Notes: a model not told the origin generated them from the sequence alone. 64,000 nucleotides of DNA from Mytilus californianus (GCF_021869535.1 NW_026262582.1:28210001-28274000); one strand, 5' to 3'. Counted from the stretch's first letter, positions 41,879-56,837 are shown. Numbers and translations: made by a program.

Positions 41879-41977
41879 CTTCTGTTCCACAATCACATGA
41901 AGAACATGATATATAACATGACGCAGCTGTAGCCATGGATATCGCACCTAATCCTATATCACCTAACAGGAATCTTT
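41879..41977 (-). CDS. Gene C exon with KR|F motif and CYxxCxxCDCG
   Basis: atttcag acceptor, gtatgt donor, 99 nt, phase 1-1; KRFLLGDIGLGAISMATAASCYISCSSCDCGTE; paralog of 56694-56837. Confidence 0.8.
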
Positions 41978-42193
41978 CTGAAATTTTGAATTGAAATACA
42001 GCGTATGCGGTTCGTCATTCATTAATTTTTAACTTACATTCGAATTCCTTCATTAGGTAATCTAAAAATAATCAAGTAAGTCTTCCATGCGTTTGAGTTA
42101 TAGATATATATATTAAATTGTGTCGTTATGATAACATACTCAATGTTCTACAACTTTGTACTTTTATTTTCCTTTTTAACTTTTTTGATTCGA

Positions 42194-42237
42194 GCATCAT
42201 TGATGAGTCTTTTGTAGACGTAACGCGCATCTAGCGT
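42194..42237 (+). ncRNA. Degenerate family 1 hammerhead
   Basis: GCATCA-TTGATGA-GTCTTTTGTAGAC-GTAAC-GCGC-ATC-TAGCGT; core mutated at C3 and A13, probably inactive. Other decayed copies at about 32873-32916 and 50353-50398. Confidence 0.6.
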
Positions 42238-42594
42238 TCAAATTTTTATCTATGATAAGGTTTTTTTATACTCACGCTCATCGTACAAGTCCCTTCTATT
42301 AGTTGGTATTATTATCATTAATGGTTCTCTTTTGTTAATCATAAATACAATGCAAAAGATATTAATATAATAGATATTAAAAAACTATAATAAGAAAAAT
42401 TGTATACGTAGTTTCTCTGAAACAATAATCAAAAACTGTAAAACAACCAAGTGGAAACTTTTCTTGAAAAATTGAATTGAATGAGAGAAGGGTTGAAATA
42501 GTTTCATAAACGATAGAATAAGATTGATACAATAGAGGCAACATTATTTCACTGATGTTCAAATCTCATAACTCCATTCAGAACTACAAGTTAA

Positions 42595-42926
42595 GATGAT
42601 ATCGGATATGTTCCTTATGTTGTAACTACAATACCCTTTCCTTTTCACGAATGTGACCTACCGAATTAGATTATTTACCGGATTTGTAATTACATAAGAA
42701 CACGACGGGTGCCACATGTGGAGTAGGATCTGCTTTCCCTTCCGGAGCACCTGAGATCACCCCCAGTTTTTGGTGGGGTTCGTGTTGCTTTAGTCTTTAG
42801 TTTTCTATGTTGTGTCATCTGTACTATTATTTGTCTATTTGTCTTTTTATTTTTGGCCATGGCGTTGTCAGTTTGTTTTCGATCTATGAGTTTGACTGTC
42901 CCTCTGGTATCTTTCGTCCCTCTTTT
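42595..42926 (+). mobile_element. Naiad-type family 2 3' end, young copy
   Basis: Near-identical to 28340-28609. Confidence 0.75.
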
Positions 42927-43207
42927 AAGGTTAAAAAACGTTACTCGCGTAAACTCTAACAAGACCGAGACCGGTTACGACTATAAGGATAGGGTCTCCT
43001 GCTATACATGCATCTGAATTATACAGCAAACAAGTTCAACATATCCAAGTGCCAGGACCATTATAAATTTCAAAAAAAAATACATAAGAACATTCACAGC
43101 AAGATTTAATTTAACTATTTTAAAGGATGATAATGTTTGATTTCGATTAGTCAAATTGACAAATTTTTATTCAGTAAGAAATATTTAATTCTATCTATAT
43201 TGCTTAC

Positions 43208-43280
43208 TTGTTTCATCTTTTCTCGTTTTCTGTTCACAGCTTTTCTCAATACGACCAATATCTATGTTCACATAACCTGT
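43208..43280 (-). CDS. Gene C exon completing the N-terminal domain
   Basis: 73 nt, phase 0-1, gtaagc donor; TGYVNIDIGRIEKSCEQKTRKDET; paralog of 57528-57591. Confidence 0.75.
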
Positions 43281-43594
43281 CTTCATTAATAAAAGGTTAA
43301 AAATAAACAAATTAAATTCGTTTAGTTTGTTATACAATACCTGTAAACCTGAATGATAAATAGTTTGAAAAAGTCATAATGATTTACTAATTTCAAATAA
43401 AATATTTAGGATAATAATTATGAGATTTAAACAAGATGCATGCATAATCCATATCTGTTCAATAATTTTTAAAATAAAATTCATATCAAAAATTATGTCA
43501 TTACGTTAATTATGTCTCCAATTTGAAGTTTCAGAATTTAATGCATTCAGTATAATACTTTTAAAAGCCTACACCTTTCAATGAATTGTATAAA

Positions 43595-43965
43595 GGATGT
43601 TTTTGAATTTTTGCCAGATATTCGGAATCCTCTTGTTTTATCAATGTAGTGCTTTTAAAAATTTTACCTGCTAACCCCTACTTTTCTTTTCTTAATTTTA
43701 TTACATATAGTTTAAAAAGCCATATTTGAAAATCTTATAAAATCCTTGTTATTTTTTTATAGTTTTTTAAAAGAAAAGGAGACAATATTATAAGAAAAAT
43801 CTAGAGAGAATCATTTCCCGCCAAATTTACAACGGCTTATATCTCGAAAAGAAACTCAAGGACCCTTCATTCTTTTCTGCTTTCTTAGTTCCTTTATGTA
43901 TATATTTTCAATTTATAACAGTTTTTTAAAAAGCTTGCTATTTTGAAAGAGAGAAGCGAACATCC
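43595..43965. mobile_element. MITE with short TIRs (Kolobok-like)
   Basis: GGATGTT...AACATCC flanked by TAAA / TTAA. Confidence 0.5.
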
Positions 43966-44527
43966 TTAACGAACTTATGTTTTAGCTTTTATAGCTGACT
44001 ATGAGATGTGGGTCTACTCATTGTTGAAGACCGTAAGGTGACCTATTACTGTTAACTTCTATGTCATTTGGTCTCTGGTGGAGATTTGTCTCATTGGCAA
44101 TTATACCACATTTTCTTATTTATATATTATTTGCATTCTTATGAAGTCACCGAATGAGACTTTTTTCCGGGATTTTAACTTGTCTTGTTAACATCACGAC
44201 GGGTGACACTATGTGATTGGGACTGCTTAATCTATCAAAGCACGTAGAGATTGTTAGGTTTTAGCCTGCAATAACCTCGCATTTTCTATTCGTTCCGTTG
44301 GTTGTTAAAGTCTAAACGTTTGATTTTTGTCGGGTCTTATTAGTACTACACCCAGAGTTCAATTTTTAAAACTTTAATGTACCGGAAGAACACACACCTA
44401 AATTTCGTATCAATGGAAGAGGAAAATGTCTAAACGTTTGACTTTTGTCTAGTCTTATTACATGGACTTTCCACTTGGAATTTACCTTGGAGTACGGTAT
44501 TTTTGTTAATTCTTTTGCATTACGTAC

Positions 44528-54029: not shown

Positions 54030-54143
54030 CTATTTGTTGTGTCCCAATTTTTGGAGATTGGGTGTCTGGAGTAGACGTGTCAGCAGGTAAAGAGGTAGGT
54101 GATACTGTTATTTTTGTCGTCTTCTGGTCAGTTGTCTGGTAAC
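54030..54143 (-). CDS. Gene D Thr/Pro-rich linker exon
   Basis: 114 nt, phase 1-1; YQTTDQKTTKITVSPTSLPADTSTPDTQSPKIGTQQI. Confidence 0.75.
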
Positions 54144-54489
54144 CTTGGTAATGTAAACAAGACCATGAAATAGATACATTTGGTTGTAACTTTTACTCAT
54201 GAAAGAATATTCAAATATTAGCAAAGTTTAAGAAGAAAATACGTTTAATATAAAGCTGTTGTTTGTCGCCTCTGAATTTTCATAATTATCAAGTCATATG
54301 TTTTTATTACAAAGTGCCACCCATTTCAGGCAGTTTAATTCATCTAAATAAATGAAATCTAGATATATGATTTTTTGTAAGTTGGTTTATAATACGATTT
54401 ATCTATTCAACTGATGATCCACAATAAATAGTAACACAATTTTAAGATATAACAGTTTTTCCAGTTTTACATGTATGATATATGTATAC

Positions 54490-54739
54490 CTGATGTTTGT
54501 TTTAAAATGTTTGTAGTTTGTTTGTTCGCAGATTGGATAGTAGCTGTTGGTATTGTTGTCTGGTTTTGATGCTGAGTAACTTAAAGAAATATTATTCATT
54601 TTAAAATTTAATGTTGAATTAAAACTGTACGAATTCGTGTGAATAATTAATGCTGTAAATCTCTCTATAGGAACGTGTAAAGTAATATTACAGTTTGCAT
54701 CTTGTGATAACGTTGCAGAAATATTTGTAATTTTATTTC
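54490..54739 (-). CDS. Possible gene D exon, Asn-rich with several N-glycosylation sequons
   Basis: Open 250-nt segment with AG/GT ends and two Cys, but phase 1-2 does not fit the neighbouring exons. Confidence 0.3.
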
Positions 54740-54770
54740 CTTTAAACAGAAGCAGGATTTTGACACGTTT

Positions 54771-54774
<4 letters not shown>

Positions 54775-54816
<42 letters not shown>
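54775..54816. repeat. (TC)n microsatellite, with a short (GA)n tract at about 54848-54862
   Basis: Directly visible. Confidence 0.95.
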
Positions 54817-54819
<3 letters not shown>

Positions 54820-56693
54820 CGATCGAAATTGTCTCTAGAAATCACTTGAGAGAGAGAGAGAGATCTCAAAAAAATGATTTCCGCAGTCAATAAATAAAGG
54901 ATATTTGTAATAGTTTATTCTTTAATGTAATCTTAAAACATCGTCTTCTCTCGTATGAAGTGACCTCTGATATAAAAGAGAACCATTGCATTTAGCCCAA
55001 ACATAAAGAATTGTTTACAAGGCTGGTGAGAATACTAGTATGTGTGTGTAAAACAAATGTTAAATAGAGCATACCACTTTTAGATTGTAAATGCATATCA
55101 ATTTTATAACATGGTTTCGGTCTGTGTTAAAGTACTCAAAAGTTATTTCATTGGTCAAAATGCTCATGGGAAGTAAAATGTGATGATAGATGGATTAATG
55201 GAAATAACACATTTTTAATGTGTTACACCGATGTACTTTTCTTGATTTACCTTCATCAGTTACATCATACCCCAAAACTTAAAGGCCAATGATGTGTAAT
55301 TACCAAAGGTAGGCGTTTTATATAGATATAAGAAGATGTGGTATGAGTGCCAATGAGACAACTCATAGCTTACTTAACGGTACTGGTTTTTCTCGTTGTT
55401 GAATGACGTTCGATGACCTACATTTGTTTAATTCCACGTCATTTGGACTGTGTTGAAAAGTTCTCATTGGACATACCCTTGGTCAACTGTGACTAAGGTT
55501 TCCATTTGTAATAATTTGTTTAATCAATTCATTTTCAAGTATAAATAGCAGAATTGTATTTCCATAACAAACGTTAAGATATATTTAGATTTTTGTTGTA
55601 GCATATCTACAAAGAATCATACATACGTATTTGGTTATTGGAGCAGAGTAAATCCTTACAAAGCTTGCATGGCTGTCGATTGAAGCAATCACCTGAAATT
55701 TCGGATAAAGGAGTACTAAGCTGTAAGAAATATTCACTTCAATACATTGTTAGTATTTTGGTATAAAAAGTAACCCCTCTGAACAGACACCCCTCTTCCA
55801 ACGTATTTTCCTCTATAATAGTCTTATATATAAAGGGGAGTAATTAGTACAGGCAGCAGGCAAAACTTTCAGTGACACAATGGACTGAAACCCTGTTAAT
55901 AACAGGCCGTTCTACCGAATCCCCAATGAAAAACATGACTTAATCATGCCATATTCAACTATATTCTTATTCTTATTCTCGAATATTTTTCGGTTATGAC
56001 AGCTGGTAAAGATTACAAATCTTTGATTATTCAATTGATGGGATAGAGAATGGAAACTAGAAATGTATCTAAGAGACAACAAACATGCAGCCCAAGGCCA
56101 CCAATAGGCCTTCAACGCAACGAGGCGGGTTTCAGCGGTCCCCTACACAATTATCGTATATTTGCTCAGCAAAATGGACGACACACCGAACATACAAATG
56201 AACCAACATTATAAAATCACACAAGACTAACAAAGGCTAAAACTGTTTTCTTGAGCTTGATATTTGAAATAGACACTCAGCTATTACAGATACCAAATCT
56301 GGCAGACACTAACTTCGCTTGTTATAACCTTGTACTTCAGTTACAAATCGAGGAGGGTGTCGATCTTGTAGCTGGATTCTATTGTAATTATTAAATGGTC
56401 TTTTATTAAAATTACATTAGCTGTAAAAAGAGAAAATGAAGAAATACGTTACTTTAACTAATGCCAAAAAAAATGTTAATCGAGAAATGATCGATTGGTG
56501 TTCCTGTGAAAAGATACAATGGTTGCTTAGGGTTAATTGTAGGTGTAATCATGTTAGAACATTCAATACATTGTGATAACAATCGTCTATAACAGAAAAT
56601 CATACCAGATAGCGTAGGCAAATTAAACTCCCAAAAATATACCCCTGAGTGAAATCAGGTCTAATGAAGAAGATTTGATGCGTATGCATATAC

Positions 56694-56837
56694 CTCCACA
56701 ATCGCATACTCCACATGTAGAGTAGCATGCCATCTTCTCTGCGCCGGTCATCATTCCTACCATTGAGGATTTCATTCCTTCCATCATTCCTTTCATCATA
56801 TTGGCGAAGAAAAATCTTTTAGAAATACTTTTGTTTC
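56694..56837 (-). CDS. Gene D exon with KR|F motif, Met-rich segment and CYxxCxxCDCG
   Basis: catttacag acceptor, gtatat donor, 144 nt, phase 1-1; GNKSISKRFFFANMMKGMMEGMKSSMVGMMTGAEKMACYSTCGVCDCG. Confidence 0.8.

What the first reader, a model, noticed from the sequence alone, without database searches (positions are those of the whole stretch)
41879..56837. Hypervariable hydrophobic segment exposed by a conserved KR|F site: fusion-peptide-like in C, Met-rich in D
Seen: between the conserved KRF and CYxxCxxCDCG, gene C has FLLGDIGLGAISMATAAS (18 aa, Gly/Ala-hydrophobic) and gene D has FFFANMMKGMMEGMKSSMVGMMTGAEKMA (29 aa, 9 Met). Known: dibasic cleavage followed by a Phe-initial Gly-rich hydrophobic peptide typifies class I viral fusion proteins and some membrane-active propeptides. 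Inference: processing unmasks a membrane-active or metal/oxidant-binding N-terminus that diversifies quickly. KR alone is not a full R-x-K/R-R furin site.
Basis: partly seen in the sequence, partly recalled or inferred. Interest (0 to 1): 0.7.

Follow-up and report, generated by a model that had tools for sequence, protein, structure and literature searches.

The report
Mussel-only secreted protein pair, cleavage-type junction
Two neighbouring mussel genes encode small secreted proteins found only in the mussel family, in which a conserved basic-Arg/Phe junction is followed by a greasy stretch that differs sharply between the two genes but is well conserved between species, so it is an old, maintained difference and neither a fast-evolving nor a virus-like fusion peptide.

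Summary
The peptides are real and lie at the stated coordinates on the minus strand. They are exon 4 of two tandem, spliced genes. Gene D has 9 exons and 294 aa. Gene C has at least 7 exons. Layout: signal peptide, ~80-aa all-beta 4-Cys domain, basic linker ending K-R, Phe-initial segment, 8-Cys module, Thr/Ser-rich linker, one EGF domain, short tail. In gene C the Lys of KRF is a split codon made by splicing. Orthologues of both genes lie in the same tandem order in Mytilus edulis. They also exist in M. galloprovincialis, and D exists in M. trossulus and M. coruscus. A hydrothermal-vent metagenome contig, probably vent-mussel DNA, carries a distant homologue. No relatives were found outside mussels.

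'Hypervariable' holds only between the paralogues: 3/29 identical plus an 11-residue gap. Between species D's Met-rich segment is the best-kept part with the EGF (26/29 identical, dN/dS 0.09 against 0.25). C's segment evolves like the rest of C (0.44 against 0.52). The vent homologue's segment is D-like, so Met-rich is probably ancestral. D's extra length includes a 12-nt tandem repeat coding MMxG.

Arg|Phe is invariant, with K, R or E at P2 and more basic residues upstream. Convertase cleavage is therefore plausible but unproven. There is no membrane anchor or heptad region, so a class I fusion architecture is excluded. Function is unknown and interest is modest.

The parts
61304..61306 (-). 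Gene D exon 1, coding part: ATG only, followed by a GTAAGA donor. The 5' end of the exon is not determined.
   Evidence: Collinear with the annotated start of M. edulis XP_071148019 in L001 (85% nt identity over 409 bases); sequence read; the complete ORF was checked.
58348..58548 (-). Gene D exon 2: rest of the signal peptide (probable cut SQA|YD) and the first 51 residues of the all-beta 4-Cys N-domain.
   Evidence: 84% aa identity to M. edulis
57528..57591 (-). Gene D exon 3: end of the N-domain and start of the basic linker (phase 0 to 1).
56694..56837 (-). Gene D exon 4: linker NKSIS, K-R (56820-56815), the Met-rich segment and the first four Cys of the 8-Cys module.
56728..56814 (-). Gene D segment of the finding (29 aa, 9 Met). 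It contains a 12-nt tandem repeat at 56772-56799 that codes MMxG units.
55627..55692 (-). Gene D exon 5: second half of the 8-Cys module (C-x5-C-x2-C-x4-C).
54490..54579 (-). Gene D exon 6: Thr/Ser/Gln-rich linker exon. It is present in the M. coruscus protein and decayed in M. edulis.
54030..54143 (-). Gene D exon 7: Thr/Ser/Pro-rich (mucin-like) linker.
53248..53409 (-). Gene D exon 8: EGF domain.
   Evidence: Pfam PF00008, E 5.3e-06, above the gathering score. A contig of run X11 stops matching exactly at the donor 53248 and runs on unmatched.
52149..52189 (-). Gene D exon 9: tail ending ...WLHILGK plus the stop codon. The Gly-Lys end is conserved in all D orthologues.
44528..44728 (-). Gene C exon 2: signal-peptide tail and N-domain. 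Exon 1 was not fixed; a candidate ATG lies at 45531-45529.
43208..43280 (-). Gene C exon 3: end of the N-domain and the basic linker. Its last base A is the first base of the Lys codon of K-R.
41879..41977 (-). Gene C exon 4: (K)R, the Gly/Ala-hydrophobic segment (41972-41919) and CYISCSSCDCGTE.
38868..38942 (-). Gene C exon 5: second half of the 8-Cys module.
36916..37098 (-). Gene C exon 6: short Thr-rich linker and the EGF domain.
   Evidence: Pfam PF00008, E 2.5e-06
35805..35965 (-). Gene C exon 7: Thr/Ser-rich tail and the stop codon.

Best explanation
Genes C and D are tandem paralogues of a small secreted protein family restricted to mussels (Mytilidae).

Layout of the protein: signal peptide; an ~80-residue all-beta domain with 4 Cys; a hydrophilic basic linker ending in (K/R/E)-Arg; a Phe-initial, helix-prone hydrophobic or amphipathic segment of 14-29 residues; an 8-Cys module; an O-glycosylation-type Thr/Ser linker; one Notch-type EGF domain; a short tail.

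The segment is a paralogue-specific module, not a fast-evolving patch. It changed once, after the C/D duplication. C became Gly/Ala-hydrophobic. D kept the older Met-rich amphipathic form and is longer, its extra length including a 12-nt repeat coding MMxG. Each form has since been held by purifying selection.

Most likely mechanism (inferred, not shown): in the secretory pathway a proprotein convertase cuts after the invariant Arg. This separates the 4-Cys beta domain from the 14-Cys C-terminal fragment, and the R|F-hydrophobic-hydrophobic start becomes a free N-terminus. In D the conserved C-terminal Gly-Lys would in addition be trimmed and amidated. What the exposed helix then binds (membrane, metal, or a partner protein) is open.
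For: Gene structure:
- Both genes give intact ORFs with canonical AG/GT sites and consistent phases.

Orthologues and range:
- The M. edulis locus L001 is collinear with the window and holds D and C in the same tandem order.
- Orthologous proteins: P0001, P0010-12, P0024/25 for D; P0026/27 for C.
- An exhaustive profile search of 1.84 billion representatives gave only two true hits. One is the Mytilus D cluster. The other is a cluster from hydrothermal-vent and other metagenomes.

Selection (dN/dS is below 1 in every exon):
- D segment 0.09 against 0.25 for the rest of D; C segment 0.44 against 0.52.
- In six D sequences the segment is 83% invariant columns, against 58% for the N-domain and 46% for the linker.
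- The vent homologue's segment aligns with the D type, 8/14 identical to M. coruscus D.
- TRF finds a 12-nt repeat inside D's segment.

Junction:
- It reads SISKR|F (D, five species), ETKR|F (window C), KTRR|F (M. edulis C) and RKER|F (vent). All fit the general convertase rule of a basic residue at P2, P4 or P6 plus Arg at P1.
- Cys counts are even on both sides (4 and 14).
- Gly-Lys ends all D orthologues although the tail otherwise varies.

Segment properties:
- D has a helical moment above shuffles (p about 0.02-0.04). C is hydrophobic (Kyte-Doolittle (KD) 1.46 over 19 residues).
Against: - No protein-level evidence of cleavage.
- A second conserved K-R (GKRC) lies inside the folded EGF domain, so a conserved KR is not diagnostic by itself.
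- P2 is Glu in the vent homologue, and P6 is not conserved among D orthologues.
- The invariant Arg-Phe could be a structural contact.
- The RNA-seq run sampled showed no reads on D exons 2-7, so expression of this copy is documented only by one contig at exon 8.
- Both AlphaFold models were of low confidence (pLDDT 30 and 43). Exposure or burial of the segment could not be judged.
- The dN/dS values rest on 18-29 codons.
Confidence: 0.5

Rival explanations
1. No cleavage. The basic linker and Arg-Phe are structural, and the segment is an internal helix or hydrophobic strap. It packs between the beta N-domain and the 8-Cys module, or mediates oligomerisation through its small-xxx-small spacing. 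The paralogue difference then reflects a changed intramolecular or partner interface.
For: - A conserved KR also sits inside the EGF fold, where cleavage is unlikely.
- The conserved core is R-F-hydrophobic-hydrophobic, which could be a packing anchor.
- Both predictors draw the segment as helices next to the Cys module, at low confidence.
- The strong conservation of D's segment fits a buried or interface role.
Against: - The linker before the site is hydrophilic, variable and rich in basic residues in every lineage, which is typical of an exposed processing loop.
- P2 changes K to R to E while upstream basics compensate.
- D's conserved C-terminal Gly-Lys points to regulated-pathway processing enzymes.
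Confidence: 0.33
2. A rapidly diversifying, membrane-active, fusion-peptide-like N-terminus is unmasked by dibasic cleavage, in analogy to class I viral fusion proteins.
For: - Gene C's segment is Phe-initial, Gly/Ala-rich and hydrophobic directly after K-R.
- From memory, not tested here, it resembles paramyxovirus-type fusion peptides in composition.
Against: - The segment is not rapidly diversifying.
- No transmembrane anchor lies downstream; no 19-residue window outside the signal peptide reaches Kyte-Doolittle (KD) 1.6.
- The 8-Cys module starts at once, so heptad repeats are impossible.
- C's segment carries Asp, and Arg as well in M. edulis.
- D and the vent homologue are Met-rich and only mildly hydrophobic (Kyte-Doolittle (KD) 0.1-0.3), and that form appears ancestral.
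Confidence: 0.07
3. For D specifically: the (MMxG)n helix is a Cu(I)/Ag(I)-binding or oxidant-scavenging Met cluster. This is compatible with either cleavage state.
For: - 9 Met in 29 residues with repeated MxxM / MMxxMM spacing, invariant across five Mytilus species.
- Met also recurs in the vent homologue, as M-x2-M-x3-M.
- From established knowledge: Mets motifs of Ctr1, CopC/PcoC and the Met-rich insert of CueO bind Cu(I) through thioethers.
Against: - This rests on pattern only. There are no His or Cys partners within the segment.
- Gene C lost the Met residues yet keeps the rest of the protein.
- Met-rich amphipathic helices also serve as plastic hydrophobic binding surfaces.
Confidence: 0.15
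4. Chance ORFs or decayed pseudogenes without function.
For: - No reads on D exons 2-7 in the RNA run sampled.
- A frameshifted EGF exon copy lies nearby at 34373-34541.
Against: - Nine (D) and six (C) exons join into open frames with canonical splice sites.
- Synteny and dN/dS below 1 against M. edulis.
- Independent gene models exist in four Mytilus species.
- One contig of run X11 ends at the exon 8 donor.
Confidence: 0.03

Closest known systems
Molluscan prohormone / neuropeptide precursors (FMRFamide-type precursors with KR|F sites and Gly-Lys/Arg amidation ends; from established knowledge)
   Same: Signal peptide; a dibasic site directly before Phe; in D a conserved C-terminal Gly-Lys. 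In gene C the dibasic site is completed by splicing.
   Different: Both sides of the site are large, disulfide-rich folded modules with an EGF domain. There are no repeated small peptides and no acidic spacers.
Class I viral fusion glycoproteins (paramyxovirus F type)
   Same: A basic cleavage-type site followed by a Phe-initial, Gly/Ala-rich hydrophobic stretch. This holds for gene C only.
   Different: No heptad repeats and no transmembrane anchor. An 8-Cys module follows immediately. D and the vent homologue carry a Met-rich amphipathic stretch instead. The protein has only about 260-294 residues.
Met-rich Cu(I) motifs (Ctr1 Mets motifs, CopC/PcoC, CueO Met-rich insert)
   Same: Dense MxxM / MMxxMM spacing in D, conserved between species.
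   Different: A secreted animal protein of unrelated architecture; no His partners; binding not tested.
Vitamin-K-dependent clotting factor N-terminal layout (propeptide, basic cleavage, membrane-binding N-terminal module, EGF)
   Same: The order of parts: pro-part, basic site, hydrophobic N-terminal module, disulfide module, EGF.
   Different: No Glu-rich Gla motif and no protease domain. The N-terminal part here is a folded 4-Cys beta domain.
Bacterial-type SH3 domains (SH3b, PF08239)
   Same: The ESM Atlas model's structural neighbours for residues 18-84 are nearly all SH3_3-bearing proteins. The sequence has a G-G-Y-x-V...G-x-x-G-F-V pattern where SH3b domains have their Trp-containing strands.
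   Different: No Pfam match. TM-scores were only 0.37-0.47. A Foldseek search of solved PDB structures with my model found nothing significant, and a VIA-align scan of about 48,000 solved chains gave only generic beta sandwiches.
Notch-type EGF modules (PF00008)
   Same: Six Cys with C-x4-C-x5-C-x8-C-x-C spacing; the Pfam score is above the gathering threshold.
   Different: A single module in a small protein, with a long loop (12-14 residues) before the last Cys.

Membership tests
Class I viral fusion protein | C-terminal transmembrane anchor downstream of the fusion peptide | tested here: not met
   Kyte-Doolittle scan with 19-residue windows. Outside the signal peptide the maximum is 1.03 (D) and 1.46 (C, which is the segment itself). 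Nothing downstream reaches 1.6.
Class I viral fusion protein | Heptad-repeat regions after the fusion peptide that form a helical hairpin | tested here: not met
   The segment is followed at once by the 8-Cys module, then a Thr/Ser linker and the EGF domain. No long helical stretch was predicted.
Class I viral fusion protein | Basic cleavage site directly before a hydrophobic Gly/Ala-rich peptide | tested here: inconclusive
   Met by sequence in gene C. Not met in D or the vent homologue, which are Met-rich and carry charged residues.
Proprotein-convertase substrate (secretory pro-protein) | N-terminal signal peptide | tested here: met
   D starts with M, then a hydrophobic core, then SQA|YD. 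The 19-residue Kyte-Doolittle maximum is 1.59-1.67 at residues 3-21. The same holds in the orthologues.
Proprotein-convertase substrate (secretory pro-protein) | (K/R)-Xn-(K/R) motif, n = 0, 2, 4 or 6, with Arg at P1, conserved among homologues | tested here: met
   KR (all D, window C), RR (M. edulis C) and RKER (vent homologue).
Proprotein-convertase substrate (secretory pro-protein) | Cleavage observed in vivo | not testable with these tools
   No proteomic data were on hand. Paper searches by accession and by peptide found nothing.
Mets-motif Cu(I)-binding sequences | Repeated MxxM / MxM spacing | tested here: met
   D: M at 6, 7, 10, 11, 14, 18, 21, 22 and 28 of the 29 residues. Conserved in five species.
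Mets-motif Cu(I)-binding sequences | Measured Cu(I)/Ag(I) binding | not testable with these tools
   Needs the peptide and a competition assay.
EGF-like domain (PF00008) | Pfam score above the gathering threshold | tested here: met
   27.0 bits (D exon 8) and 28.1 bits (C exon 6) against a cut-off of 21.5; confirmed in the orthologues.
Bacterial SH3 (SH3b, PF08239) | Sequence-profile match | tested here: not met
   hmmscan at E up to 10 gave no SH3 family on the N-domain. A PDB profile search was blank.
Bacterial SH3 (SH3b, PF08239) | SH3-like beta-barrel fold | tested here: inconclusive
   ESM Atlas neighbours are nearly all SH3_3 proteins, but TM is 0.37-0.47 and the feature score 0.83. My AlphaFold model had pLDDT 43 and seven strands. 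Foldseek's top rows are SH3 domains at E of 0.14 or worse. VIA-align gave a best Z of 4.1 on FN3 and pilin sandwiches.
Gla-domain clotting-factor type N-terminus | Glu-rich Gla motif after the propeptide cleavage site | tested here: not met
   Only 2 Glu in D's segment and none in C's.

The most novel reading that the evidence does not exclude
A mussel-specific activation-by-cleavage effector. Convertase cutting releases a bacterial-SH3-like (cell-wall-binding type) pro-domain. This unmasks, on an 8-Cys/EGF scaffold, an N-terminal helix that is membrane-inserting in paralogue C and Cu(I)- or oxidant-reactive in paralogue D. The duplication would then have split one ancestral function into two chemistries used in immunity, adhesion or gamete interaction.
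Probability: 0.1. Interest if true: 0.7.

Novelty: new variant of a known kind. Interest (0 to 1): 0.3.

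Why it matters
If the junction is cleaved, this would be a compact, lineage-restricted pro-protein. A single exon would specify both the processing site and a swappable N-terminal helix, with two naturally fixed versions side by side: Met-rich amphipathic and Gly/Ala-hydrophobic. That makes a convenient natural experiment on how a duplicated secreted protein changes the chemistry of an exposed terminus.

It also gives names and a testable hypothesis to a set of 'uncharacterized' or mis-named ('notch 3-like') Mytilus gene models.

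The variability is an old paralogue difference, not ongoing diversification, and there is no link to viral fusion machinery.

Tried and rejected
- Pfam on all exon pieces and on full orthologues gave only EGF.
- A word-index protein search with the 67-aa exon 2 found nothing. The length filter excludes full-length kin.
- A spliced window protein could not be handed to the search or fold tools because it has no reference. I worked through the orthologue ids P0001, P0025 and P0026 instead.
- AlphaFold on P0001 with 5 sequences gave pLDDT 30. On residues 18-162 of P0025 with 14 rows it gave pLDDT 43. Neither could show whether the segment is exposed.
- Foldseek against PDB gave no match at E of 0.001 or better.
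- VIA-align wide gave a best Z of 4.1 on generic beta sandwiches.
- PDB sequence-profile searches for the N-domain and for the segment plus 8-Cys module had no hits at E up to 10.
- An ESM Atlas search on residues 96-162 gave nothing usable.
- Paper searches by accession, by peptide strings and by keywords had no hits.
- RNA reads: run X3 (about 6% read) gave no depth on D exons 2-7. Only repeats were covered.
- Metagenome scans for more vent-type homologues failed. The alignment was too divergent, the exon 4 piece was too short, and the exon 2 scan gave no confirmed relative.
- Rfam on 34-62 kb found nothing at the gathering score.
- A Gla-type N-terminus and a membrane-spanning role for C's segment were considered and rejected. 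The segment is 18 residues long, contains Asp, and scores KD 1.46.

Full report
**What is there.** The window is AT-rich (about 32% GC). It is full of dispersed repeats and has no long bacterial-type ORFs, so it is animal DNA. Six-frame searching found both peptides of the finding on the minus strand. Self-comparison at the protein level showed that they belong to two paralogous sets of short exons.

Reading the splice sites by hand gave consistent gene models. Orthologous proteins then guided the remaining exons.
- Gene D has nine exons from 61306 to 52149 and an open frame of 294 codons.
- Gene C has exons 2-7 from 44728 to 35805, 263 codons. Its one-codon-type first exon is not fixed.
- All introns have AG/GT ends. 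Exons 4-8 of D are phase 1-1.

The finding's two coordinates are exactly the 3' end of C exon 4 (41879) and the 5' end of D exon 4 (56837).

**Protein layout.**
- Signal peptide.
- An ~80-residue domain with four Cys, predicted all-beta.
- A hydrophilic basic linker ending K-R.
- The segment of the finding: 18 residues in C, 29 in D.
- An 8-Cys module split over exons 4 and 5.
- A Thr/Ser-rich linker.
- One EGF domain (Pfam PF00008 above threshold).
- A short tail.

In D the K-R is encoded directly. In C the genome reads E-R, and the Lys arises only by joining the last A of exon 3 to AA of exon 4.

**Relatives.** Pfam left everything but the EGF unexplained, and the word search with an exon piece was blank. 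I therefore ran the exhaustive profile search with the aligned exon 2 of C and D. Among 1.84 billion representatives only two clusters were true hits.
- The first is a 260-aa 'uncharacterized protein' of Mytilus edulis, with members in M. galloprovincialis and M. trossulus.
- The second is an 82-aa exon-level ORF from metagenomes.
- A further search added M. coruscus D (293 aa) and the C orthologues of M. edulis (labelled 'notch 3-like') and M. galloprovincialis.

The M. edulis locus L001 is collinear with the window and carries D followed by C, as here. The metagenome contig L002 comes from a hydrothermal-vent sample. Its exons 2, 3 and 4 have the same structure. I take it for vent-mussel host DNA, which is an inference.

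Window D is 78-80% identical to both the M. coruscus and M. edulis proteins. The window therefore comes from another Mytilus-like mussel.

**Is the segment hypervariable?** Only between the paralogues. C against D gives 3/29 identical plus an 11-residue gap, while the other regions are 31-54% identical. Between orthologues the picture reverses.

| Comparison (window vs M. edulis) | aa identical | dN/dS, segment | dN/dS, rest of gene |
|---|---|---|---|
| Gene D segment | 26/29 | 0.09 | 0.25 |
| Gene C segment | 11/18 | 0.44 | 0.52 |

- In six D sequences 83% of the segment's columns are invariant. That equals the EGF domain and exceeds the N-domain (58%) and the linker (46%).
- Two M. galloprovincialis alleles differ in the N-domain but not in the segment.
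- The vent homologue's 14-residue segment (FLFNQMKNMFETMI) aligns with the D type, 8/14 identical to M. coruscus D, and not with C. The Met-rich amphipathic form is therefore probably ancestral and C's Gly/Ala form derived.
- D's extra length includes a 12-nt tandem repeat coding MMxG.
- These rate estimates rest on few codons.

**The junction.** Arg at P1 and Phe at P1' are invariant in all lineages.
- P2 is K in all D sequences and in window C, R in M. edulis C, and E in the vent homologue, where P4 is R and P3 is K.
- The 11-13 residues before the site are hydrophilic, variable and basic.
- Cys counts are even on both sides.
- All D orthologues end in Gly-Lys although the rest of the tail varies. 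From established knowledge this is the ending used by carboxypeptidase and amidating enzymes, and KR|F is the standard site in molluscan FMRFamide-type precursors.

This makes convertase processing plausible. It is not shown. A second conserved K-R sits inside the EGF fold, so a conserved KR alone proves little.

**Properties of the segment.** D has a helical hydrophobic moment above shuffled controls (p about 0.02-0.04) and low mean hydrophobicity. C is hydrophobic (KD 1.46 over 19 residues) with little moment, and contains Asp, plus Arg in M. edulis. Neither protein has a transmembrane window downstream, and the Cys module follows at once. The defining architecture of class I fusion proteins is therefore absent.

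**Folds.**
- Two AlphaFold runs were of low confidence (pLDDT 30 and 43). They draw the N-domain as seven strands and the segment as helices.
- The ESM Atlas search points to bacterial-type SH3 domains for residues 18-84 at sub-threshold scores.
- Foldseek lists SH3 domains first but at E of 0.14 or worse.
- VIA-align gives only generic sandwiches (Z up to 4.1).
- PDB profile searches were blank.

The N-domain fold is unresolved, and SH3-like remains a lead.

**Expression.** In the one raw RNA-seq run available (about 6% read) there is no depth on D exons 2-7. A contig of run X11 (RNA by guess) matches exon 8 and stops matching exactly at its donor 53248 while running on. This is consistent with splicing there.

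**Verdict.** The word 'hypervariable' is wrong for evolution between species. The viral analogy fails on architecture. The cleavage idea survives as the most likely mechanism, at about even odds. The family is mussel-only, unstudied, and already present in databases as unnamed models.

Noticed in passing
window 34373-34541 (minus strand): A lone copy of the D-type EGF exon, 80% nt identity to 53241-53395, lies 1.3 kb beyond the stop of gene C. It has a one-base frameshift in an A-run and cannot be joined in frame to C exon 6. It is probably a relic of a partial duplication.
   Followed up: partly
window 55314-55364 (intron 5 of gene D): A ~45-base element has very high depth in all four runs: about 630 reads in X3 and summed contig depth up to about 47,000 in X4. 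The reads run on into unrelated sequence on both sides. Related copies lie at about 13285-13341, 39542-39589, 59000-59032 and 62211-62267. There is no Rfam match at the gathering score.
   Followed up: partly
L001 14720-14880 versus window 54490-54579: The 30-codon Thr/Gln-rich linker exon 6 of gene D is used in M. coruscus and is intact in the window. In M. edulis it is decayed: the donor is lost, indels are present and stops occur in all frames. This explains the 260-aa against 293-aa proteins.
   Followed up: yes
window 45767-46087, 51464-51767, 37924-38222, 141-1114: Several copies of one interspersed repeat (77-87% identity) lie between and inside genes C and D and elsewhere in the window. 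The same element sits upstream of D in M. edulis (L001 8896-9153).
   Followed up: no
window 61340-61363 (minus strand): A short upstream ORF (ATG ACA TTT GGC AGA CGA GTT TAA) and a TATA-like run (61376-61392) precede the one-codon first coding exon of gene D. This block is 85% identical to M. edulis.
   Followed up: no
They are unrelated to the C/D family.
   Followed up: no
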